From positions 124,001 through 188,000 of IMG/VR virus record IMGVR_UViG_3300036770_004723: a stretch of DNA of 64,000 bases. One strand, written 5' to 3'. Position numbers and translations under genes: made by a program. Below, piece after piece: positions 980 through 27,737 of this stretch (positions are counted from its first letter, which is position 1; every line of letters starts with the position of its first letter). The notes beneath the pieces are model-generated. The model did not search any database. It saw only the letters and a program-made list of their open reading frames with translations, and was not told where the DNA came from.

Positions 980-995
980 TTTTAAATTCAAGTGT

Positions 996-1023
996 AAAAG
1001 GTGGCAAATTTGCCACCTTTTTT
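996..1023 (+). terminator. Rho-independent terminator, possibly bidirectional
   Basis: AAAA-GGTGGCAA-AT-TTGCCACC-TTTTTT. Confidence 0.85.
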
Positions 1024-1614
1024 ACGTCTAAATTTTGCCAATTTCAGCCTAAAATAAAAAACTTTTTAGCTTAAAAGCTCTTGACTGTGTTCCTATTATA
1101 GGTCAAAAAAGTCATTTTGAGCATTGAAGCGTGCAAAATGACTGGTTAAAAAATGAACAGCAATCGGCACATTAGTTTGACATAGCACAGAGCTGTCTCG
1201 TTGTATCAAAACGAAGTCCCGTTTTGTACCTTAAAAAGGGTCATAAATAATGGGTACTGTAAATCACTCACTATAGGACCTAATGTATCAATGGCTAAAT
1301 GTCTCCGACTATAAAAACCGTAGGTTTTAGGATGGACGTAACGAAGTGAAGTCCAGCCTGAATCAATGATTCTTACTTTTAAAAATTTCTCCAGACCCCG
1401 GCAGACAACAGACAAATAGTAAAAATTAAGGATCATTTATAATAAATTTAAACGGATACGGGTCTTAGTAAATTTATTTAATGCCATAGATCTGCCTGCG
1501 TTTTCTCTTGCAGGATCTTTTGATAGAAGTCTTTTCTCTGCGCTAGATAGCTCTAAAGAGCAAACAAGCAAAACCGATGATCTGTATAAAGATCTTTAGT
1601 AAAATAGATTTTAC

Positions 1615-1897
1615 TAGTTGTTTGCCGGGTGTTGGGGTTCCGGGGAAATATTCTATAATGTATTAAAGCTATTCGCTTCGCTCATAGCTACTAATGTGTT
1701 GCAAGCTAACGCTTGCACTTTTTCTTTTCTTTTCTTTTCTTTTCTTTTCTTTTCTTTTCTTTTCTTTTCTTTTCTTTTCTTTTGATCTTTAGTTGTTTGC
1801 CGGGTGTTGGGTCCTGGAGTAATTGTTTATTAATGTGTTTTAGGTTGTTTCGCTTCGCTACACAACCAAAACGGATTGCAAGCGTTAGCTTGCATCC
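1615..1897 (+). repeat. Imperfect ~105-bp direct repeat (1615-1718 and 1790-1897), with a partial inverted third copy at 1381-1410
   Basis: Identical 22-mer TAGTTGTTTGCCGGGTGTTGGG at 1615 and 1790; shared TTCGCTTCGCT and TGCAAGC-N4-GCTTGCA elements. Confidence 0.9.
1720..1783 (+). repeat. (TTTTC)12 pentanucleotide microsatellite
   Basis: Directly visible; pure pyrimidine run 1718-1783. Confidence 0.97.
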
Positions 1898-2129
1898 TTT
1901 ATTATCTAATAGATCCCTTTACAAATATTTGGGTTAATAGATCTTGATCAGATCCGGGGGCTGTGGCTCGACCCGCGCCCACAAAACCCGCGCCCGCGAC
2001 AGCGCACAGCCTCATTTCTATGACACACAGAACGCTGCCGTTCACTAATAAAACACTGCTTTTTGAAAATCTGAAGCTAACCACTGAAAACCTTACTGCG
2101 TATTAAGAGATTTACCGGAAGACCCTTTT

Positions 2130-2948
2130 ATGGCTGAAATCGTTAAAAAAACTAGTACCTTGTCAAGTGCTTGGGGAACCACTGCAAAAATGCACAATAC
2201 CCGTTGGACACCTGACGAATTTGTCGAAGAACTTTGTGTTCTTGCAAAATACAGACTAAGAAAGCGTAAAATGGTTGCACTGGTAAAAGAATTTATTGAT
2301 GTTTGTGTTGAATACCGTTACATGAAGAAAATAAACTTGCTTCTATTAGGCTTAGCAAAAAAACTTAAGGATCTTAACTTACTTGCGGAAATACTTGTAT
2401 ATTGCGGAGATTTAAGGTTACGTGATGTACTGAAGTTCCGCATGGACAGTTTTGTAGATACCTTTAACAATAGAAATGTAGGTAAAAAAATTTTGGCTCA
2501 AGTTTACACATTAGACCATTTGTGGTTTAATCTTTATGGTAACAGTTTAAAACGTATTAGAGGTTGCGCCGTCCATCCAAATTCAATTATAAACAGAGAG
2601 AAAGTACTAAGGTACATTAATGAAAATTGGCCTACATCCGCAAGATCTAGTTATCAAACTTTCTTTGATCGATTTCCTCAAATTTCTGATAATAGGCAGC
2701 TAATAAGATTCTTATACTGTAAATATTATTGTAATAGGGTAAGACCTAAAAGTATAATCATATTCTTTAGCATGGAATCTTGTATACATAAAAAGCTATG
2801 CGGTTTTAATTACAGGCTAACAAGTAAATGCGGGAAGTACGTAATTTATCAACGAAGTAGACTGAAAAAGAACAGTTACTTTGAATTACATCATAACAAT
2901 CAAGTTAGTATACTAACAAAGGAAGACCTACAATGTCTAGAACAGTAA
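2130..2948 (+). CDS. Hypothetical basic protein directly downstream of the origin-like region (possible DNA-binding/initiator)
   Basis: 272-aa K/R-rich ORF; no recognisable motif. Confidence 0.6.
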   Translation: MAEIVKKTSTLSSAWGTTAKMHNTRWTPDEFVEELCVLAKYRLRKRKMVALVKEFIDVCVEYRYMKKINLLLLGLAKKLKDLNLLAEILVYCGDLRLRDVLKFRMDSFVDTFNNRNVGKKILAQVYTLDHLWFNLYGNSLKRIRGCAVHPNSIINREKVLRYINENWPTSARSSYQTFFDRFPQISDNRQLIRFLYCKYYCNRVRPKSIIIFFSMESCIHKKLCGFNYRLTSKCGKYVIYQRSRLKKNSYFELHHNNQVSILTKEDLQCLEQ

Positions 2949-14087: not shown

Positions 14088-14759
14088 ATGGCTACTACTG
14101 GTAAAGGTAAAGGTAAAGGCGGTACTGGTGCAGGTTCTCGCTTAAACGGTAACGTGAATGCTAAGACCACTAAGCAAACACAGAAGCAAAAAGCTGCTGC
14201 TGCTGGTCATGGTAAGAAAATGACAGCTGCTGAAAAAGCAAAAGCAGCAAAAGCAGCGGCCTTGCGTGATAGAAAGAAAACTCCTGCCGAGAAAAAATTC
14301 GAAGCAGAACGCGCTAAAGTTTTAGCTGAACGTCGTGCTAAAAAAGAAGGTAAAAAACCTGCTGCTGATAAAAAACCGGCTGCAACAAAAACTTTCGCTG
14401 ATCGTTTAAAAGCGTGGAAAGAACGCGGTAAGACAATTACTGATAGTTTCAAAAAACGTATGACGGATCTTAAAAAACGTCAGTCAGATGCTTTAGCTTT
14501 GCGTAAGAAAAAACAAGCTGAAGCGCGTGAACGTTTAGCTGAACGTTACAAAATGTCCAAAGAAAAATGGGAAAAACGTCAACCACAGAAAGCTCAAGCT
14601 CCAAAAGCTCCAGCAGGTAAAGCTCCAAAAGCTCCAGCAGGTAAAGCTCCAAAAGCTCCAAAAGCTCCAGCAGGTAAAGCTCCAAAAGCTCCAGCAGGTA
14701 AAGCTCCAAAAGCTCCAGCAGGTAAAGCTCCAGCAAGCGGCCGTTTCCCTAAAAAGTAA
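14088..14759 (+). CDS. Histone H1/AlgP-like Lys/Ala-rich DNA-binding protein
   Basis: GGAGG SD; K/A/P-rich with KAPKAPAG repeats; strongly biased codons; own terminator. Confidence 0.8.
   Translation: MATTGKGKGKGGTGAGSRLNGNVNAKTTKQTQKQKAAAAGHGKKMTAAEKAKAAKAAALRDRKKTPAEKKFEAERAKVLAERRAKKEGKKPAADKKPAATKTFADRLKAWKERGKTITDSFKKRMTDLKKRQSDALALRKKKQAEARERLAERYKMSKEKWEKRQPQKAQAPKAPAGKAPKAPAGKAPKAPKAPAGKAPKAPAGKAPKAPAGKAPASGRFPKK
14589..14735 (+). repeat. In-frame tandem repeat, mainly a 24-nt unit AAAGCTCCAAAAGCTCCAGCAGGT (KAPKAPAG)
   Basis: About five copies, one with an extra 9-nt KAP unit. Confidence 0.92.
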
Positions 14760-19441: not shown

Positions 19442-20173
19442 ATGTCTCGTGTGGAATTAGGTGATATTAAAAAACCGAAAATCAAACCTAAAGTCAAAAC
19501 AGTAGAACAACCTAAAGTCAAAAAGAAAATCAAACCTAAAGTCAAAAAGAAAATCAAACCTAAAGTCAAAACAGTAGAACAGCCTAAAGTCAAAACAGTA
19601 GAACAGCCTAAAGTCAAAAAGAAAATCAATAAAAATCTTGATAAAAAAACAGTTAAAGTCAAAAAGAAAAAAACTCAAAAACTAGATATATCCAGCGGCA
19701 AGGATCTTATTGCTGAAGGTAATGCTATTCTTGAACGCATGTCTGAAAATATTTTCGATGAAAACCGTATTTATTTAGATCAGTATAAACATATGTTTCA
19801 GAAGTTAGCTGCTATGAGTGAAATAGCTGAACATCAATACTTTGCTAAAAAACAAAGTCGTGATATTTATGCACTGATGAAACTTTATGATCAAATGCGA
19901 GAAGTTATTGCGGATCTTAAAGCGCTACAAAACGTAGGGCAATATATTGATGCAGTGATGGATGATGTAATCGAGCCTTTTGCTAAAACAGCTATACAAG
20001 CTTTGCTTGATTTAATTAGTTCTACTAACGCATATAGTAAACGAAATTTAGATCCTGAATTTTCTAAATTATTGGAAGAACAATTGAAATCTTTTGGTAA
20101 AATAGGTGGTATCATGTTGCAAGAAGGATATGATGCCGCAGTAGAAAATACTAGACGTATACTTGAAGGTTAA
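19442..20173 (+). CDS. Protein with Lys-rich repeat N-terminus and helical C-terminal domain
   Basis: GAGGA SD; PKVKTVEQ / PKVKKKIK repeats. Confidence 0.78.
   Translation: MSRVELGDIKKPKIKPKVKTVEQPKVKKKIKPKVKKKIKPKVKTVEQPKVKTVEQPKVKKKINKNLDKKTVKVKKKKTQKLDISSGKDLIAEGNAILERMSENIFDENRIYLDQYKHMFQKLAAMSEIAEHQYFAKKQSRDIYALMKLYDQMREVIADLKALQNVGQYIDAVMDDVIEPFAKTAIQALLDLISSTNAYSKRNLDPEFSKLLEEQLKSFGKIGGIMLQEGYDAAVENTRRILEG
19487..19630 (+). repeat. Six 24-nt tandem units of two types, order A-B-B-A-A-B
   Basis: A = CCTAAAGTCAAAACAGTAGAACAR; B = CCTAAAGTCAAAAAGAAAATCAAW. Confidence 0.92.
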
Positions 20174-21668: not shown

Positions 21669-24600
21669 ATGGGAACAACTATTGAAGGACAATACTCTGT
21701 TAGCTCTGATCTTACTTCTATTAGTAATGCAACAGAAGACCTTAAAACAACTTTACTTAAATCTATTGCACCTATTGAATTAAATGAAGCACACAGACAA
21801 GCATATGAAGATGTGTTCTTTACGATTAAAGGCGCGAAAGATTCTAAATTTTCTCAAGACAATTTACGCAGTGCCGTTATTGAAGCACTTAACGTAGGCA
21901 GTAATCTTAACACATTCTTCGCTTTTATTCGGAGAGTGTTTGACTATGCACATTTGTTTGATGATTTACCTAGACAAGAGTTGGAAATGAAAATTCAATC
22001 TCTTGCCAATGAAATGAAAACCAACAATTTGGGTGTGACTGAGGCTGAAGGAAATTTATTTCTCCACGCTTTCCGTTTATTAGATTCAGTAGATAGTGAT
22101 GAAATCCGAAACAACCCATTTAAAGGAAAGCCTGTAGATCAACGTCCAAGCGTTATACCTTTGATAAAAAAATCAACTCGGTACAAAGGTGGCTACGACA
22201 TTATCTATGCAGGTAAAAGTAATCGCGGTGGTATGAAAATCAGTATGTCACCTTACCCACATATTGATCAAGATCCTGTAGGTTTAGGTTACGAACGTAA
22301 AAAACAAACAAATTACAATACAGAAATTGCCTTAAAAGCTGTTAAAGCTGCTAAGCGTATTATGGAAATGATTACCTTACGTAGTGACCAAGGTGCTTTT
22401 TCTGTTGAATCTTCGAACAAAAGAAGATTTTGTCAGTTTCCACTAGATTACTCTTTTGAAAGTTGGAATGACGAAATTTCGAAAATTATGGGAATGAGAT
22501 TAGAGTTTTTCAAAAATCTTGATCCTGTTGTTCGCCCGTATAGAAACTTTTTTAGCGCTGTAGTTATCATAGAGCCTCCTGAAAGTGTTGTTTTCGCTTT
22601 AAATTCTTTTAACACAAGCTCTAGAATGGTAGCCCGTGGTTATAGTTCGCGTCCTGTCGTCCGTCCTGTACTAACCGATATTATTAACGAAGAATCCGCC
22701 TACACACGTCAAGTTGGATCTTCTGTAGCAATTAATTTAGATCTTCCTTTTGTCAAATATATTTGCCAAGATGAATCTACTGATAAAGTTTATTATTGCT
22801 TAAGTACTTGGACTAAGCAATGGACTAGTGCTTTTTTGCGTCCTAAAAATACAAGAGGTGGCGTGAATTTGGATCCTAAAAAAGTTGCAAGGTATATTGT
22901 GCCTTGTAGTCGCTTAGGCTCTATGGAAGAAGCACGTAAAAAATTAGGCTTACACGTATCTGATACTAAAACTAACGAAGATGGCTTAGTTGTAATGCCT
23001 AAAGGTCTTATCAGTTATATGCCAAGACCTGAAGATGCAAGCAATAAAAATGCCGTAGAATTTGAACGTAGTTATGAAGATTATTTACAAACCATTTATG
23101 AATTGAATCTAACACCTGGGCAGTCAGTTGACGAATACACTACAACTATGTTTCCAGATGATCCACGTTTAACCGATGGTTCAAATTTAGGTTCTTTCCT
23201 GCAAGATAAAAAGAAAAACGTCGATTTATATGGCGGTTCGTTACTAGCTTTTAACTGGGATTATGGTACAGCACTTTACGCGCAAACTTCTTCAGATGGA
23301 ATTGCGCAGATTCCTTTGAATGGTTGTTCGCAAATGGATCCGTTAATGATAGCGGATTTCTTAGGTTACGACTTTAAACAAAGCGGTCAAGTTGCTCAAC
23401 ATAAAACGTTCTTAGCTGCTTTAAATGAATTTAAATTTTCTTTTGATTCAAAAGATCGTCTTACTTCAGAAGCAACTTTAAGTACTTTGAGTAAAATGGC
23501 TACTAGTCTAAGGTTGCCTGAAAAATTCACAGACTTAGAAAGCGTACCTATTTACCAACGAGTATTTTTAACGCAACGTATGCTGCACTTATTCGAAGCT
23601 TATTCGTTTTTTGCTGCACGTAATAAAGTTAAAAATATCGAAGAGCTTTTCGAAGAAACAAAAAAACAGATGGGTGTTGATCTGTTTACGACGGAAGGCA
23701 CTCCATTAGATTTCAATCTTTATAACGATCTAATTGGTGATAATATTAGCGCCAGTTCTCTTTCTGTAAGACATAAAGAAGGTCAAGGCGCAATTGTACT
23801 TTGCCTACTTTTACTTGCCTTAAAAGATGCGCAAGGCCGCCCAGGATCTAATTTATTTAACTTTGTGTCAAGAGAAGTAGGGTATCAAAACGCTCCTACT
23901 GAAGTTAAATCTCATGAAGCTTACTTTGATTGTACTTCTCCATCTATTAGAATGGCTGATTTTGGAAATGTATACAATTATTTCGGCGGCAGATTGTTTA
24001 AAAACATGTGTAAGGCCATTACACAAATTCCTAAGAAAGATTTGCTTTACTCTGATCGGGTTAAAGACGAATCGTTTAAAAATAACCAACCTACATCATT
24101 TAACTATATAGCTAATGATGTATTGCCAATGGCTGTAATTTTTAGCAAGTACGTTCCGAATTATTTAGATTATTTTGAAAAAGCTGAAGATATTTTTGAT
24201 CAATATAATCCAGATGAAACTATTGACATCAACGACATTATTGCTCCGGGCATTGAAGCAAATAAAAACAGCACTAAACCTGCGTTGTTTCCTCACCAAG
24301 TAAAAGCAAATCAGTTTTTACGTAAAGCACCTAAGTTCGCAATATTGGACATTAGCCCAGGTGGCGGTAAAACTACAATAGGCATCATTGATATTTTATG
24401 TTTGGCTGAAAAGCATAAAACAGAAAAGTTTGTACCTATTGTACTGGCACCGGATCGTTTGTGTGCTAACTGGTGTGAAGATACTGCGAAGTTTACTAAA
24501 GGTAATTGGAATACTATTCCAATCACTCGTGCTGTTGTTAACGTCTGGGGTTACGATTTACTTTATAAAATCATCAAAGAAGCTCCACGCAATACAATAT

Positions 24601-27600
24601 TAATAGTAGGCTTAAACTTTTTAAGTCGTCAGAATCGTTTTAACGTTTCTTACGGTGCGAAAGATATTGATATCTCAGGTAGTGTTGAGTTTATCAAACA
24701 ATTCAACCCATCTTATGTACTACTTGATGAAAGTCATAAAGCAAAACGCTTTGACCGTGCTGGTGGTACAAGCGCCTTACATAGTGCGGTTAAAGAAGTA
24801 ACTACTATGACAGGCGTTAAATATATTCGTTTGGCTACTGGTACACTTGTACATGGATTACTTGAAGATGTTGTAGGACAAGCTGCTTTATTGAGTTCTT
24901 ATGCTTTAAAAACTCCAGATAATATGGATGTTACTTTAGCCACTATGGAACGTGAAAAGTTAGCAGGTGCTATACGTAATAAACTTGGTAAGTATTGTTC
25001 ACTTATTACTTTAAAACGTAAAGAGTGGGCCTTCATGTTACCTAATCCAATTGATGCTTTTTACACTGTGCGTCTTTTTGACTCTAGTATAGGTGCAGAC
25101 AAGTTAGGTAACAGATTACACCAAGAAGCTTATGAACATGTTATGTCAGAAGCTAAAGAGATCATGTTAAAAGGCAGTGTACGTGATCTTGAAAAAGATG
25201 TTGATATTTCGGATGAAGATGAACCTCAGTTTGGTGATGACGATGACGATAGCGATGGTGATCGAGAAGGCAAGTCAGATTCAATCTTAGGTGAAAACGG
25301 AGAAGTTGATACGCATATCATGGCGATGTTGGACAAAAAATATTTCCAACGTGCCGAACAAATGATTGTCAATCCTTGGGGCGACGATTATTTTAAACAG
25401 ATCGCAGATCAAGCCGGATTGAAAGAAACTGATTTTACTCCAGCACCTATTATCAAAACTACACAATCAATTATTAATCACTTTGTTACAATTGATTTTG
25501 ATGGTAATCCTGATAATGAAGGTCGGGTATACAATTGGAAACCTGAAGTACAATTTAAGGAATTCGATGTAGTAGAATACAAAGGCAAATCTTATATGCG
25601 CCGTGCTTTACCTGCTGTTGAAGGTAAAGAAGTATCTATTACACGTAGATTGACACCTGCATCAAATGTATCTCCAGATAAAGATCCTGAAAACTGGAAA
25701 TCTGAAAGTCGAGGTAAAGTTTTAGTTTTATGTCGTTATATAGGTAACACAAAAGCTATATACGAAGCGTTACCTATTAAGTACAGATCTAAAGCCCGTG
25801 TTTTTCATGGTAAGCTGAAAAAATCTGTAGGTGAAGATAACATTGAACAGTTTAAATACAATGACGATGTACAAATACTTATAGCTAACGAACAAGCTAT
25901 TGCAGAAGGTCTTAACCTTCAAATGGCAAGTCGTATTATTCGCGTTGACACACCTTGGTCACCTGGTGAATATGAGCAAAGTACTGCACGTATTTTCCGT
26001 CCTGATCCTGCTGCTGCAAAACGTGATGAAAACGGCAAAGTAGGTGATATATCACGCGAAGTTATTTACATTGATTGGATTATGTGTGAAGGAACTTTGC
26101 AAGTCGGTAAGATCGCTAGATTAATGTGGAAAACTGTTGAAAACGTTCGCTTTAACGAAGAAGGAAATGAACATTACGATCCTATGAAGCCTTTTGTGCT
26201 TGATAAGATTACAATGGGCATGGATCTTTTATTTAATCGTTGTCAGATGGAAGATTACATGGGAGATGATCCTATGAATCCCGAAATAAACAATTATTTC
26301 GGTGCGAAAGCAACACTGGCAACATTGGAACGTCAAGAATTTATGCAAATGCGAAATACCACGCAAGCAGAAATGATTGATATGGTTATCCCACCTATGC
26401 CTAAAGATTTTAAAAAGCTCCAACTTTTGCCTACACTACCTAACCAAGTCATTCCGGATCCAGATGATTTTGGTTTAATAAAATTGCCTGATTTTATTAA
26501 ACAGAACTTAGATGAAATCATTGAAGATCCTGAAGAAGTATTAATAGGCTTACCTGTTAAAACTGGTTTTGGTACTGGGACAATTATTGGCATTCAACGT
26601 GGAAATAGAATTAAGGATTTGACTACAGGTGAGCAAGTTCTAAATCCTGAAAAACCTATTACCAGTGTTAGAATAAAATATCATGCTAGTAATGAAGCAC
26701 TTAAGGATATTCCAAGCGTTAATATGCCAATCGAAATGGTATATGTTGCTACCAAAGTAGATGGAAAACGTGCGGACAAGTTCTTTAAACCTACTGAAGC
26801 AAATGCCGCTGATCGTGCGCGTTTAGAACGCGCAGCACAAGAAGCAGCTAAACAGGCAGAGGAAAAGAACAGAAAAGATCAACGACGTGCCGAAGAACAA
26901 GCGCGTAAAGATCGAGAAGCCGCTGATCGTAAAAAACGAACAGATGCCCGTGTTAAAATACGCGATCAGAATAAGATTGATAACAAACCTATAAATGATG
27001 GAATTGAAGTAGTACCTAAAATTCCAAGAGTCATTCGTGGTGAAGTTGAAATCATTAAACCTGATCAACGTATTCCAGTAAGAAATCAACCAGAAATTAA
27101 ACCTAAAGGTATACCACTCAAACTTATTCCTACATTCTACAACGGATTTTTGTGTTTGCATGTTACTAACAATAACCCTGCGGCACCTAAGTTGAAAAAA
27201 TTAGGTTTTGAGAACTTCGACGACTTTATTTATATGGACTTCGAAGACTTCTATAGGTTTGAAGGTTTGATTCACTGGCTATACAAACAGGAAAAATTAC
27301 AAAACCTTATTATTGAGGAAGAAAGCTTAAAACGTTTAGAAATTATTTCTGATGCGTTTGAGCATGAACACATTAATCCAGAATTAATGTTTAATTACAA
27401 ACAAGCAAAACGTGCCAATAACAAAATTGAAGACTTCTTCAGAACGTTGAAGCGCGTTAATCGTAATAAAAAGCTTGTGCGTATGTACACAATAGTAATG
27501 CACGATAGATTGCGTGTAGTAGTGGATGTTAAGACAAATCCAGTCGCTTCACTAATGAAAGGCAAACTTATCAGTGCTGTAGGTGAAAAGTGGAAACTGC

Positions 27601-27737
27601 ACCCAGGTATGCACATTTACTTTGGTGGTGGTAAACGCGAAGTAGTTAACAAGATCAAAGAACTTCAGGCTAAAGGTTATGATATTGAAAACCTACAGTC
27701 TGTTATTGAAGCAATAGATGAACTGAGACTTAGATAG
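21669..27737 (+). CDS. Giant SNF2-like (SF2) ATPase/helicase, 2022 aa
   Basis: LFPHQ Q-motif, SPGGGKT, LLDESH, ATGT, EGLNLQ, PWSP...QSTARIFR. Confidence 0.88.
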   Translation: MGTTIEGQYSVSSDLTSISNATEDLKTTLLKSIAPIELNEAHRQAYEDVFFTIKGAKDSKFSQDNLRSAVIEALNVGSNLNTFFAFIRRVFDYAHLFDDLPRQELEMKIQSLANEMKTNNLGVTEAEGNLFLHAFRLLDSVDSDEIRNNPFKGKPVDQRPSVIPLIKKSTRYKGGYDIIYAGKSNRGGMKISMSPYPHIDQDPVGLGYERKKQTNYNTEIALKAVKAAKRIMEMITLRSDQGAFSVESSNKRRFCQFPLDYSFESWNDEISKIMGMRLEFFKNLDPVVRPYRNFFSAVVIIEPPESVVFALNSFNTSSRMVARGYSSRPVVRPVLTDIINEESAYTRQVGSSVAINLDLPFVKYICQDESTDKVYYCLSTWTKQWTSAFLRPKNTRGGVNLDPKKVARYIVPCSRLGSMEEARKKLGLHVSDTKTNEDGLVVMPKGLISYMPRPEDASNKNAVEFERSYEDYLQTIYELNLTPGQSVDEYTTTMFPDDPRLTDGSNLGSFLQDKKKNVDLYGGSLLAFNWDYGTALYAQTSSDGIAQIPLNGCSQMDPLMIADFLGYDFKQSGQVAQHKTFLAALNEFKFSFDSKDRLTSEATLSTLSKMATSLRLPEKFTDLESVPIYQRVFLTQRMLHLFEAYSFFAARNKVKNIEELFEETKKQMGVDLFTTEGTPLDFNLYNDLIGDNISASSLSVRHKEGQGAIVLCLLLLALKDAQGRPGSNLFNFVSREVGYQNAPTEVKSHEAYFDCTSPSIRMADFGNVYNYFGGRLFKNMCKAITQIPKKDLLYSDRVKDESFKNNQPTSFNYIANDVLPMAVIFSKYVPNYLDYFEKAEDIFDQYNPDETIDINDIIAPGIEANKNSTKPALFPHQVKANQFLRKAPKFAILDISPGGGKTTIGIIDILCLAEKHKTEKFVPIVLAPDRLCANWCEDTAKFTKGNWNTIPITRAVVNVWGYDLLYKIIKEAPRNTILIVGLNFLSRQNRFNVSYGAKDIDISGSVEFIKQFNPSYVLLDESHKAKRFDRAGGTSALHSAVKEVTTMTGVKYIRLATGTLVHGLLEDVVGQAALLSSYALKTPDNMDVTLATMEREKLAGAIRNKLGKYCSLITLKRKEWAFMLPNPIDAFYTVRLFDSSIGADKLGNRLHQEAYEHVMSEAKEIMLKGSVRDLEKDVDISDEDEPQFGDDDDDSDGDREGKSDSILGENGEVDTHIMAMLDKKYFQRAEQMIVNPWGDDYFKQIADQAGLKETDFTPAPIIKTTQSIINHFVTIDFDGNPDNEGRVYNWKPEVQFKEFDVVEYKGKSYMRRALPAVEGKEVSITRRLTPASNVSPDKDPENWKSESRGKVLVLCRYIGNTKAIYEALPIKYRSKARVFHGKLKKSVGEDNIEQFKYNDDVQILIANEQAIAEGLNLQMASRIIRVDTPWSPGEYEQSTARIFRPDPAAAKRDENGKVGDISREVIYIDWIMCEGTLQVGKIARLMWKTVENVRFNEEGNEHYDPMKPFVLDKITMGMDLLFNRCQMEDYMGDDPMNPEINNYFGAKATLATLERQEFMQMRNTTQAEMIDMVIPPMPKDFKKLQLLPTLPNQVIPDPDDFGLIKLPDFIKQNLDEIIEDPEEVLIGLPVKTGFGTGTIIGIQRGNRIKDLTTGEQVLNPEKPITSVRIKYHASNEALKDIPSVNMPIEMVYVATKVDGKRADKFFKPTEANAADRARLERAAQEAAKQAEEKNRKDQRRAEEQARKDREAADRKKRTDARVKIRDQNKIDNKPINDGIEVVPKIPRVIRGEVEIIKPDQRIPVRNQPEIKPKGIPLKLIPTFYNGFLCLHVTNNNPAAPKLKKLGFENFDDFIYMDFEDFYRFEGLIHWLYKQEKLQNLIIEEESLKRLEIISDAFEHEHINPELMFNYKQAKRANNKIEDFFRTLKRVNRNKKLVRMYTIVMHDRLRVVVDVKTNPVASLMKGKLISAVGEKWKLHPGMHIYFGGGKREVVNKIKELQAKGYDIENLQSVIEAIDELRLR

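What the first reader, a model, noticed from the sequence alone, without database searches (positions are those of the whole stretch)
1381..1897. Duplicated hairpin modules with compensatory stems, conserved GCGAAGC core and a flipped hairpin
Seen: two ~105-bp modules each contain the identical 22-mer, then a hairpin whose stem sequence differs but still pairs (AGCTAT/ATAGCT vs GGTTGT/ACAACC) around a conserved TTCGCTTCGCT. A second hairpin follows: TGCAAGC-TAAC-GCTTGCA in copy 1 and TGCAAGC-GTTA-GCTTGCA in copy 2, which are exact reverse complements. A partial third copy lies inverted at 1381-1410. Known: GCTTCGC read on the bottom strand is GCGAAGC, the unusually stable DNA mini-hairpin associated with phage G4-type origins and N4 virion-RNAP promoters. 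Inference: selection acts on ssDNA (or RNA) structure here, for example primase-loading signals, hairpin promoters or nicking/packaging sites arranged for bidirectional use.
Basis: partly seen in the sequence, partly recalled or inferred. Interest (0 to 1): 0.75.

Follow-up and report, generated by a model that had tools for sequence, protein, structure and literature searches.

The report
Hairpin modules in a mobile cassette
The duplicated hairpin modules are real, conserved in related jumbo phages with compensating stem changes, and look most like small RNA genes within a 1.9-kb non-coding-plus-gene cassette that also occurs in bacterial defence islands; a single-stranded-DNA (replication) role is not excluded.

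Summary
The window lies in a 286-kb jumbo phage. The finding lies in a 1150-bp non-coding gap (980-2129) inside the replication-gene cluster.

The gap is conserved in at least 8 related metagenomic phages. It diverges about 4 times more slowly than neighbouring synonymous sites.

Across 19 module copies, 97.8% of stem positions pair and 5 pairs show changes on both sides. The literal GCGAAGC is not conserved. What is conserved is a 6-bp stem, a TC/TC internal loop, a 2-3-bp GC stem and a variable loop. A second hairpin, TGCAAGC-N4-GCTTGCA, follows with a T-rich run.

The "flip" is a loop inversion inside a palindromic stem and occurred twice independently. The inverted third copy heads its own leftward unit in the same order: box, hairpin, small hairpin, T-run. 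Module number varies (1 or 2) and so does module order.

Best reading (0.42): three paralogous small-RNA transcription units upstream of an orphan 272-aa gene. Main rival (0.25): single-stranded-DNA hairpins of an origin, because mini-hairpin-type loops sit on the template strand 27 times against 2. No RNA data exist.

The gap plus this gene also lies in bacterial defence islands.

The parts
996..1027 (+). GC-rich hairpin plus T-run (intrinsic-terminator type). It marks the left boundary of the 1.9-kb cassette shared with defence islands.
   Evidence: Inverted repeat I5. Conserved in all relatives. Phage-island homology starts here.
1253..1280 (+). Copy of the phage's genome-wide promoter-like motif (CTGTAAAT at 1257-1264, then ACTATAGG), pointing right.
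   Evidence: The motif lies 25-60 nt upstream of many genes. It is conserved in all 8 aligned gaps and is also present in Erwinia phage Y3.
1309..1328 (-). Small hairpin AAAACC-TAC-GGTTTT followed by a T-run on the minus strand: the likely end of the leftward unit. On the plus strand it reads CC-GTA-GG.
   Evidence: The T-run is present in all 9 sequences.
1329..1359 (-). Hairpin hpL of the leftward unit. The stem differs in every lineage; the 13-nt loop TTCACTTCGTTAC (minus sense) is conserved.
   Evidence: Per-sequence folds. Stems seen: GGAC/GTCC, TTGGAC/GTCCAA, GGTTAG/CTAACC, TAAGGCA/TGCCTTA, TAGAACA/TGTTCTA.
1360..1372 (-). GAATC-ATT-GATTC mini-palindrome just downstream of the inverted box. 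It overlaps a -10-like AAGAAT.
   Evidence: 5 pairs, one changed on both sides, and G.U in two lineages on the minus-sense reading only.
1373..1438 (-).
   Evidence: Present in all relatives and evolves in concert with the direct boxes; in L131 it is 27 nt identical to box 2.
1488..1518 (.). Conserved inverted repeat AGATCTGCCTG...CAGGATCT, carrying one GATC in each arm.
1550..1561 (.). Conserved palindrome GCTC-TAAA-GAGC (hp0).
   Evidence: Replaced in L131 by CTGTTC-TTAC-GAACAG, so pairing is kept.
1595..1666 (+). Box 1: the 22-mer at 1615-1636, GGGGTT core, and the -10-like TATAATGT at 1654-1661.
1667..1689 (+). Module 1 hairpin 1: AGCTAT / TC / GC-TTC-GC / TC / ATAGCT.
1700..1717 (+). Module 1 hairpin 2: TGCAAGC-TAAC-GCTTGCA, terminator-like.
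1718..1783 (+). Pyrimidine tract after hairpin 2, expanded in this phage to (TTTTC)12.8.
   Evidence: Relatives have only a 12-20-nt C/T tract. The Logan contigs of run X1 break here.
1784..1842 (+). Box 2: the 22-mer at 1790-1811 and the -10-like TAATGT at 1831-1836.
1843..1867 (+). Module 2 hairpin 1: GGTTGT ... GC-TTC-GC ... ACAACC.
1873..1906 (+). Module 2 hairpin 2: TGCAAGC-GTTA-GCTTGCA (1877-1894), extendable by GGA/TCC, followed by a T-rich run.
1936..2012 (.). Conserved near-palindrome with three GATC sites (1936-1955), then a G+C-rich block with ACCCGCGCCC twice and the inverted repeat GGCTGTG/CACAGCC.
2130..2948 (+). ORF272, an orphan protein with conserved cysteines. It always travels with the gap.
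   Evidence: No Pfam, PHROG, NCBIfam, PADLOC, PDB or fold match.

Best explanation
The two modules are paralogous small transcription units, and the inverted third copy is a more diverged unit pointing left.

Each unit is read as:
- a ~65-bp shared box, taken as a promoter plus the binding site of a regulator, ending in a -10-like hexamer TAATGT or AAAAGT;
- a transcript that starts at the base of a 5' hairpin (hairpin 1, or hpL in the leftward unit), which carries a pyrimidine-rich, fast-changing top;
- an 8-14-nt single-stranded linker;
- a second hairpin followed by a U-rich run, which ends the RNA.

This would give RNAs of about 60-70 nt. They lie in a strongly constrained 1.15-kb regulatory region upstream of the orphan gene ORF272, and together with that gene they form a 1.9-kb cassette. 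I infer that the RNAs act with or on ORF272, either by controlling read-through into it or by binding the protein.

Shown: the structures, their covariation, the fixed order and orientation of the parts, the uniqueness of the locus, the constraint on the gap, and the cassette boundaries.

Inferred: transcription itself, the RNA ends, and any partner.
For: - Structure: 19 copies, 97.8% of stem cells paired, 5 pairs changed on both sides, slid controls 18-40%.
- Terminator-like ends: every copy of hairpin 2 is followed on the same strand by a T/C-rich run. Where the linker ends in GGAT, the run starts after a pairing (GA)TCC extension.
- Promoter position: the -10-like TAnnGT lies 5-6 nt before hairpin 1 in all copies.
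- The leftward unit repeats the same order on the other strand: box, hairpin with lineage-specific stems, small hairpin, T-run. It shows a G.U pair only in the minus-sense reading.
- Units behave as separable genes: one module in L149 and L129, two elsewhere, and swapped order in L006 and L152.
- All genes of this 100-kb block, and a conserved phage promoter motif at 1257, point the same way as the modules.
- The locus is unique in the genome.
- The gap diverges at K = 0.45 against dS 1.3-2.7 in neighbouring genes.
Against: - No transcript data: no RNA run could be listed.
- There is no -35 element. The -10-like hexamer is weak, and no similar box exists elsewhere in the genome.
- The stabilising loop and mismatch motifs lie on the template strand, not in the RNA sense. 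C-G(N)NA-G loops occur 27 times against 2, and the TC/TC loop of hairpin 1 reads as tandem 5'-YGAR-3' G.A pairs on the minus strand.
- No G.U pair occurs in 272 stem cells of the modules.
- The hairpin 2 stem is sequence-invariant in all but one copy, which is unusual for a plain terminator.
- About 800 bp of the gap is conserved without conserved RNA structure (SCI at most 0.46) and without a conserved ORF. That pattern looks like protein-binding DNA.
- No Rfam family matches.
Confidence: 0.42

Rival explanations
1. The gap is a lytic replication origin or origin-like cis element. The three boxes are binding sites for an initiator, possibly ORF272. The hairpins act as single-stranded DNA on the template strand, as SSB-resistant mini-hairpin-capped signals. 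These let the phage's DnaG-type primase start synthesis away from the centre in both directions, as at G4-type ssi sites or RSF1010 ssiA/ssiB.
For: - Loops of the class GCGNAGC/GCGNNAGC/CGNNAG cap the hairpins on the strand that would template outward synthesis, 27 times against 2, with the middle bases free. This matches the DNA mini-hairpin rule better than the RNA GNRA rule.
- The plus-strand CC-GTA-GG hairpin sits on the left side of the gap.
- Hairpin 1 carries tandem G.A pairs in the minus-strand reading in every copy.
- The window gap holds 5 GCGN(N)AGC motifs against 0.35 expected.
- The gap lies inside the replication cluster, with primase and resolvase to the left and clamp loader, 2022-aa helicase, polymerase and ligase to the right.
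- It lies 1.4 kb from the main strand switch, which is also the GC-skew minimum.
- The gap contains many conserved direct and inverted repeats and GATC palindromes without RNA structure, and the phage encodes a Dam-type methylase.
- A cis site plus an adjacent trans factor travelling together is typical of ori-rep modules.
Against: - The T-run orientation in all three units is unexplained by this model.
- There is no distinct conserved AT-rich unwinding element.
- GC skew simply follows gene orientation, with four switches, so it says nothing independent.
- GATC density is not exceptional for this genome.
- ORF272 has no recognisable initiator, helicase or primase domain.
- The cassette is absent from the more distant cultured relatives, where the site is a variable region.
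- It also sits in bacterial defence islands, where an origin has no obvious use.
Confidence: 0.25
2. The modules act in cis as RNA in a long leader of the ORF272 message, which would start at the phage promoter motif at 1257. Hairpin 2 plus the U-run is an attenuator. Hairpin 1 is the binding site of an antiterminator or processing factor, so ORF272 is made only after infection proceeds.
For: - Same structural evidence as the main reading.
- A conserved phage promoter motif lies upstream, and there is no recognisable promoter next to ORF272.
- One or two successive terminator-like hairpins lie between that promoter and the gene.
Against: - Hairpins 1 and 2 do not overlap, so no alternative-pairing switch is visible.
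- Each module has its own box, and the leftward unit cannot be a leader of ORF272.
- No sequence complementary to the hairpin 1 top was found within 1.5 kb.
Confidence: 0.12
3. The palindromes are double-stranded operators, or cruciform sites, for dimeric DNA-binding proteins that control ORF272 and the replication operon. The 'compensatory' changes are symmetric half-site changes.
For: - The hairpin 2 half-sites are invariant while the 4-bp centre varies.
- The boxes evolve in concert within each genome.
- Much of the gap is conserved at sequence level only.
- Loop flips are neutral for a duplex site.
Against: - Conserved asymmetry is not expected for symmetric dimers: TC opposite TC in hairpin 1, and T...C at the loop ends of hairpin 2.
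- Hairpin 1 stems differ at 2-3 positions between module types in one genome, yet always pair.
Confidence: 0.1
4. The hairpins are N4-type promoters read by a phage single-subunit RNA polymerase on extruded template-strand hairpins.
For: GCGAAGC-type loops lie on the template strand in this phage.
Against: - No PF00940-type polymerase was detected in the 286-kb genome (the control was silent, so this is weak evidence).
- The phage group uses host polymerase with its own sigma factor (PMC7412058).
- The apical stem is only 2-3 bp and the 3-nt loop is not conserved.
- There is only one locus in the genome.
- Starts would fall in a T-run.
Confidence: 0.02

Closest known systems
Mini-hairpin-capped priming signals of single-stranded DNA: G4, St-1 and alpha3 complementary-strand origins, and RSF1010 ssiA/ssiB (review PMC13037366)
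   Same: - Stem-loops are capped by GCGNAGC/GCGNNAGC-class loops. The minus strand of window hairpin 2 reads GCGTTAGC, the octamer the review reports for St-1/alpha3.
- Two or three hairpins occur per signal.
- Signals lie on opposite strands on the two sides of a centre, as in RSF1010.
- A DnaG-type primase gene lies nearby.
   Different: - This is a double-stranded 286-kb phage.
- The exact motif is not conserved and half of the hairpin 1 loops fall outside the class.
- Every unit carries a T-run and a promoter-like box, which priming signals do not need.
- No priming or origin activity has been shown.
Duplicated two-hairpin phage regulatory RNAs, recalled from memory: HK022 putL/putR, P4 CI RNA, P1/P7 c4 RNA
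   Same: - Short RNAs of 60-80 nt made of two stem-loops.
- Present in two copies with compensatory differences.
- Placed in the leader of the genes they control.
- Fast-changing loops.
   Different: - No sequence or Rfam similarity.
- Here the second hairpin looks like a terminator and each copy has its own upstream box.
- No complementary target was found nearby.
Type III toxin-antitoxin loci (ToxIN type) and other RNA-plus-protein defence cassettes
   Same: - Repeated structured non-coding units and a terminator-like hairpin lie directly upstream of one protein gene.
- The unit moves as a block and occurs in both phages and defence islands.
   Different: - Repeat units are 146-177 bp with their own boxes, not contiguous 34-36-nt repeats.
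- ORF272 matches no PADLOC, Pfam or structural family.
- No evidence of toxicity.
Iteron-type origins next to their initiator gene (lambda ori-O, P1 oriR-repA, T4 oriE-repEB), recalled from memory
   Same: - Repeated ~20-60-bp elements in direct and inverted orientation.
- GATC clusters.
- Position inside the replication gene cluster.
- An adjacent, fast-evolving specific protein.
- Modular exchange of the site-plus-protein unit.
   Different: - No clear AT-rich unwinding element.
- No recognisable initiator domain.
- Only three boxes, spaced 175-220 bp apart rather than in helical phase.

Membership tests
DNA mini-hairpin priming signals (G4-type ssi / RSF1010 ssi) | Hairpin capped by GCGNAGC, GCGNNAGC or CCGAAGG-type loop on the strand that is used as template | tested here: met
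   The window gap has 5 such motifs against 0.35 expected. Across 19 module copies the C-G(N)NA-G loop lies on the minus strand 27 times and on the plus strand 2 times. The motif definition comes from PMC13037366.
DNA mini-hairpin priming signals (G4-type ssi / RSF1010 ssi) | The specific motif is conserved among relatives | tested here: not met
   GCGAAGC is present only in the window phage. Hairpin 1 loops in relatives, read on the minus strand, include ACCA, TTCA, TTTA and GTAT, which fall outside the class.
DNA mini-hairpin priming signals (G4-type ssi / RSF1010 ssi) | Primase-dependent primer synthesis on the single strand; origin activity | not testable with these tools
   Only assembled contigs of one DNA run are available. 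The complex prediction was not folded for a protein-DNA pair.
N4 virion-RNA-polymerase hairpin promoters | The phage encodes a T7/N4-like single-subunit RNA polymerase | tested here: inconclusive
   PF00940 found nothing in the 286-kb genome, but the control genomes were silent too.
N4 virion-RNA-polymerase hairpin promoters | 5-7-bp stem with a 3-nt purine-centred loop, conserved, at several early promoters | tested here: not met
   The apical stem is 2-3 bp. The 3-nt loop occurs only in the window phage. The locus is single in the genome.
Small RNA gene with intrinsic terminator | Stem-loop followed by a U-run on the transcribed strand | tested here: met
   The terminator scan flags both hairpin 2 copies (6 sites found against 1.0 expected in the region). 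A T/C-rich run follows in all 19 copies, and after the last hairpin of the leftward unit.
Small RNA gene with intrinsic terminator | Promoter at the right distance upstream | tested here: inconclusive
   A conserved TAATGT or AAAAGT lies 5-6 nt before hairpin 1, but there is no -35 or TG extension. The consensus scan does not report a promoter at either module's box (its + strand site at 1876-1905 lies over hairpin 2 of module 2, not at a box). No similar box occurs elsewhere in the genome.
Small RNA gene with intrinsic terminator | Compensatory changes in stems | tested here: met
   Five pairs have changes on both sides, 0 of 500 shuffles reach the covariation score, and slid controls show none. 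The copies are related, so the shuffle count is not a probability.
Small RNA gene with intrinsic terminator | A transcript of the predicted size is detected | not testable with these tools
   No RNA run could be listed.
Any Rfam family | Covariance-model match | tested here: not met
   The best hits have E of 0.025 or more and lie far below gathering scores. None falls on the modules.
Iteron-type replication origin | Conserved AT-rich unwinding element next to repeated binding sites | tested here: not met
   The only AT-rich stretches are 1430-1480, which is not AT-rich in relatives, and the phage-specific (TTTTC)n.
Iteron-type replication origin | Strand-composition switch at the site, independent of transcription | tested here: inconclusive
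   The global minimum of cumulative GC skew lies at 118-124 kb, 1-7 kb to the left. However, skew follows gene orientation at all four switches.
Type III toxin-antitoxin | Contiguous 34-36-nt RNA repeats and a ToxN/AbiQ-type toxin | tested here: not met
   Repeat units are 146-177 bp. ORF272 has no PADLOC or Pfam hit.

The most novel reading that the evidence does not exclude
The 1.9-kb unit (three small structured RNAs or DNA hairpin units, a phage-specific promoter motif, and the orphan zinc-finger-like ORF272) is a previously undescribed RNA-plus-protein conflict cassette. Jumbo phages and their hosts' defence islands exchange it repeatedly. In the island it would be switched on by the infecting phage's own promoter motif and would act against the phage. 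In the phage it would act as the matching regulator or counter-measure.
Probability: 0.2. Interest if true: 0.8.

Novelty: new variant of a known kind. Interest (0 to 1): 0.6.

Why it matters
- Jumbo phages of this group (relatives of Erwinia Y3, Dickeya JA11, Pseudomonas PaBG and Lu11) have, as far as my searches found, no mapped origin, no described small RNAs and few known regulatory sites.
- This gives a precisely delimited, strongly constrained 1.15-kb non-coding region with three oriented hairpin units and a dedicated orphan protein. It can be tested directly.
- The same unit, with the same boundaries, sits between Septu, BrxR-associated and other defence genes in bacterial contigs. Each island copy is closest to a different phage lineage. 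This points to ongoing phage-host exchange of a non-coding element together with its protein.
- The template-strand bias of mini-hairpin-type loops is an unusual, clear-cut sequence signal. It could tell whether DNA hairpins matter in a double-stranded phage.

Tried and rejected
- Phage collection blastn with the gap: no match.
- IMG/VR scans with the 22-mer, the hairpin 2 pattern, single flanking proteins and the ORF272 profile: nothing besides the phage's own record.
- Metagenome scan with the G+C-rich 17-mer: a poor choice. All 120 hits were chance matches in G+C-rich soil contigs and none carried other gap motifs.
- GTDB species genomes: no ORF272 relative.
- Rfam: no family.
- tRNA/tmRNA: none.
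- Large structured RNA spanning the gap: rejected, because SCI is at most 0.46 outside the modules.
- Hidden small protein genes in the gap: rejected. Translated matches occur in several overlapping frames on both strands, and indels are not in threes.
- GATC cluster as an origin mark: not exceptional for this genome, although individual sites are conserved.
- GC skew as origin evidence: confounded by gene orientation.
- Co-variation between ORF272 type and the hairpin 1 top: rejected, because the same protein cluster carries different tops.
- A cis target complementary to the hairpin 1 top: none found.
- ORF272 function: Pfam, PHROG, NCBIfam, PADLOC, a PDB profile search, AlphaFold2 (pLDDT 59.6) with Foldseek, and the ESM Atlas all gave nothing.
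- Protein-DNA complex prediction: the job was not folded, so it is no evidence either way.
- Read laying: only contigs of one DNA run were available. They break at the microsatellite and give no information on DNA ends or transcripts.
Full report
**Where the finding lies.** The window is bases 124001-188000 of a 286,584-bp virus record with 34% G+C. The record's two ends overlap by about 65 bp. By protein similarity of about 45%, it is a distant relative of the jumbo myoviruses Erwinia Y3, Dickeya JA11, Yersinia fHe-Yen9-02 and Pseudomonas PaBG/Lu11.

The finding sits in a 1150-bp gap without genes (980-2129). The gap lies between a 73-aa gene (758-979) and a 272-aa gene (ORF272, 2130-2948). 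The neighbourhood is the replication cluster:
- To the left: a PD-(D/E)XK nuclease, a DnaG-type primase and a Holliday-junction resolvase.
- To the right: a peptidase, a clamp loader, SbcCD, a 2022-aa helicase, a DNA polymerase and a ligase.

The main minus/plus strand switch, which is also the minimum of cumulative GC skew, lies 1.4 kb to the left. Skew follows gene orientation at all four switches of the genome, so it carries no independent information.

**The observation.**
- The 22-mer occurs twice and nowhere else in the genome.
- The TGCAAGC-N4-GCTTGCA hairpin also occurs twice and nowhere else. Shuffles give 0.00 and 0.02 expected matches.
- The two copies of hairpin 2 are exact reverse complements. 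The stem is a perfect palindrome and only the 4-nt loop is inverted.
- The inverted third copy is longer than stated: about 65 bp align with the sequence upstream of both modules.
- Between the modules lies a perfect (TTTTC)12.8 repeat.

**Relatives.** ORF272 has only a handful of relatives among billions of proteins. Their contigs gave seven further syntenic jumbo-phage loci: L005, L008, L131, L148, L149, L150/L151 and L153/L154. All have a gap of 994-1138 bp at the same place.

The whole gap aligns. Between the window phage and L005 or L008 it differs at K = 0.45-0.47. Synonymous sites of the flanking genes are at dS 1.3-2.7, so the non-coding DNA is under strong constraint. It holds no conserved open reading frame. 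Outside the modules it has no conserved RNA fold, with a structure conservation index of at most 0.46 against 0.6-0.8 over the modules. No Rfam family and no tRNA match.

**Anatomy of a module.** Nineteen copies (17 distinct) were collected with a covariance model built from the first twelve. In the window phage's own genome the model finds the modules only at this locus. It finds none in the complete genomes of Y3 and fHe-Yen9-02.

Hairpin 1 consists of:
- a 6-bp lower stem, AGCTAT/ATAGCT in one module type and GGTTAT/ATAACC or GGTTGT/ACAACC in the other;
- an invariant TC-opposite-TC internal loop;
- a 2-3-bp upper stem, GC(C or G)/(G or C)GC;
- a loop of 3-4 nt that changes freely: TTC, TGGC, TGGT, TGAA, TAAA, TAGC, TTAC, ATAC.

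An 8-14-nt linker follows. Hairpin 2 has the stem TGCAAGC/GCTTGCA in every copy but one. In that copy, TTGCGAG/CTCGCAA keeps the pairing.

Overall 97.8% of stem cells pair, against 18-40% when partners are slid. Five pairs show changes on both sides. The 'conserved GCGAAGC core' is not conserved: it is one of many interchangeable tops.

**Three oriented units.** Upstream of each module lies a ~65-bp box. It has a G+C-rich core (...TTTGCCGGGGTC...) and ends in TAATTGTT-N3-5-TAATGT, or in AAAAGT. This hexamer lies 5-6 nt before the first base of hairpin 1. Hairpin 2 is always followed by a T/C-rich run. Where the linker ends in GGAT, the run begins after a pairing (GA)TCC, which lengthens the stem.

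The inverted box at 1373-1438 is followed, on the minus strand, by the same order of parts:
- a mini-palindrome, GAATC-ATT-GATTC;
- a hairpin (1359 to 1329) whose stem differs in every lineage around a conserved 13-nt loop;
- a small hairpin, AAAACC-TAC-GGTTTT;
- a T-run.

So there are three units, one pointing left and two pointing right, from a centre at about 1440-1590. That centre holds further conserved palindromes. Units behave as separable pieces:
- L149 and L129 have a single module, produced by a deletion from box to box.
- L006 and L152 have the two module types in the opposite order.

**Loop flips.** Hairpin 2 loops read T-N-N-C on the plus strand in 16 of 19 copies (TTGC, TGGC, TAAC, TGAC). 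Two copies are exact inversions: GTTA in window module 2, and GCAA in L005 module 1 where close relatives have TTGC. The flip therefore happened at least twice. From general knowledge, this is the signature of intrastrand template switching in a perfect palindrome, a DNA-level mutation. It need not have a function.

**A strand signal that the RNA reading does not explain.** The outer loop bases are fixed and the inner ones are free. Read on the minus strand, the loops are C-GNNA-G or C-GNA-G. This is the class of extraordinarily stable DNA mini-hairpins (GCGNAGC/GCGNNAGC) that a recent review places at:
- the G4, St-1 and alpha3 priming origins;
- RSF1010 ssiA;
- N4 promoters (PMC13037366).

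The class occurs 27 times on the minus strand of the modules and twice on the plus strand; those two are the flipped loops. The TC/TC loop of hairpin 1 becomes tandem 5'-YGAR-3' G.A pairs on the minus strand in every copy, and the minus strand folds 1-4 kcal/mol better. In the leftward unit the GNA loop (CC-GTA-GG) lies on the plus strand. So in all three units it lies on the template strand relative to the box. No G.U pair occurs in 272 stem cells of the modules.

**Weighing the readings.** For small RNA genes:
- the fixed order of box, -10-like hexamer, hairpin, linker, hairpin and T-run appears in three units with consistent orientation;
- the units are separable;
- a G.U pair appears only in the RNA sense of the leftward unit;
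- a conserved copy of the phage's general promoter motif (CTGTAAAT) and all neighbouring genes point the same way.

Against that reading, and for a DNA role such as an origin with priming hairpins:
- the template-strand mini-hairpin bias;
- the invariant hairpin 2 stem;
- the absence of a -35 element;
- about 800 bp of sequence-level conservation full of direct and inverted repeats and conserved GATC palindromes (the phage encodes a Dam-type methylase);
- the position inside the replication cluster, next to a fast-evolving specific protein.

Against an origin:
- no conserved AT-rich element;
- uninformative GC skew;
- GATC density that is ordinary for this genome;
- an unexplained T-run orientation.

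No RNA run could be listed, and the only DNA run is held as contigs that break at the microsatellite. I therefore put small RNA units first at 0.42 and origin-type single-stranded-DNA hairpins second at 0.25. Lower come a cis-acting leader/attenuator (0.12), duplex operators (0.10) and N4-type promoters (0.02). The first two readings are not exclusive.

**The cassette.** Three further contig families carry the gap and ORF272 in a completely different setting: L006/L007, L152 and L129, and probably also L130. In these contigs the unit lies between the following genes:
- Septu (PtuA E = 9e-141, PtuB);
- a methyltransferase with an HNH protein;
- a candidate defence gene (PDC-S63/DUF6933);
- BrxR;
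- a UvrD/PD-(D/E)XK helicase-nuclease;
- an N6/N4 methylase;
- an IS4 transposase.

The nearest PtuA relatives are in marine Gammaproteobacteria. Homology to the phages starts exactly at the terminator hairpin at the left end of the gap. It stops at the stop codon of ORF272, giving about 1.9 kb at 84-88% identity.

Each island copy is closest to a different phage lineage:
- L130 to L150 at 95%;
- L129 to L149 at 90%;
- L006/L152 to L148 at 88%.

This argues for repeated exchange. ORF272 is under purifying selection in both settings (dN/dS 0.09-0.24), and the island copies keep all gap elements, including the phage promoter motif.

ORF272 itself remains an orphan with conserved cysteines. It has no family, structure or fold match. 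In the more distant cultured relatives the same site holds other genes, so the cassette is an accessory block at a variable site rather than a core part of the group.

**Verdict.** The GCGAAGC and N4 details are not. Whether the single strand is RNA or DNA cannot be settled with the data at hand. The element matches no described family. It is best called a new variant of known kinds: phage small RNA genes, or origin hairpin signals. It has one unexpected property, namely that it moves together with its protein between jumbo phages and bacterial defence islands.

Noticed in passing
window 980-2948; L006:5028-6941, L152:8292-10199, L129, L130: The gap plus ORF272 forms a 1.9-kb block. It also lies in bacterial-type defence islands, next to Septu, PDC-S63, BrxR, methylases and an IS4 transposase. 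The boundaries are identical in every case, and each island copy is closest to a different phage lineage.
   Followed up: partly
window 1257-1264 and about 35 intergenic sites genome-wide; L004:7700: A promoter-like motif, aaaCTGTAAATA(N4-5)tAGTAtAA, lies 25-60 nt upstream of many genes on both strands, including replication genes. It is also present in Erwinia phage Y3. It resembles T4-type late promoters and is probably read with a phage sigma factor.
   Followed up: partly
genome positions 112, 81830-96810, 252310-282351 (outside or at the edge of the window): A second motif class, AACTGATCgaaGTGTGTCAAAAA followed about 33 nt later by tgnTATAAT, has 12 copies. All are in minus-strand gene blocks. 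They are probably early host-type promoters with a shared upstream operator.
   Followed up: no
window 1720-1783: A perfect (TTTTC)12.8 microsatellite is private to this phage. It is an expansion of the pyrimidine run after hairpin 2. Independent Logan contigs of the source run break at it, so its copy number is unverified.
   Followed up: partly
window 1185-1235 and 2000-2055: An iterated motif, GCACAGA(A)GCGnTnCnGTT, occurs twice near the left end and twice near the right end of the gap, all in direct orientation. It is conserved in most relatives.
   Followed up: no
window 1936-1955: A near-palindrome, AGATCTTGATCA(A)GATCC, carries three GATC sites within 16 bp and is conserved in 7 of 8 relatives. 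The phage encodes a Dam-type methyltransferase at genome 235250-235996.
   Followed up: partly
genome ends (positions 1-200 and 286385-286584): The two ends of the record share about 65 bp with one mismatch. The assembly is therefore circular or terminally redundant, although it is classed as linear.
   Followed up: no
window 14596-14732 and 19472-19674: Perfect or near-perfect in-frame tandem repeats, with periods of 24, 33 and 57 nt and of 24, 48 and 72 nt, lie inside two protein genes. They encode low-complexity Lys/Pro/Ala-rich stretches.
   Followed up: no
ORF272 (window 2130-2948) compared with its neighbours: ORF272 evolves faster than its neighbours (dN 0.25 against 0.03-0.22). Between L005 and L148 it also has higher dS (0.37 against 0.09-0.20). 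This suggests the cassette has a history separate from the flanking core genes.
   Followed up: partly
window 21669-27737: A 2022-aa protein matches a phage DNA-helicase family over its whole length (PHROG 21391). That is unusually large for a replicative helicase.
   Followed up: no
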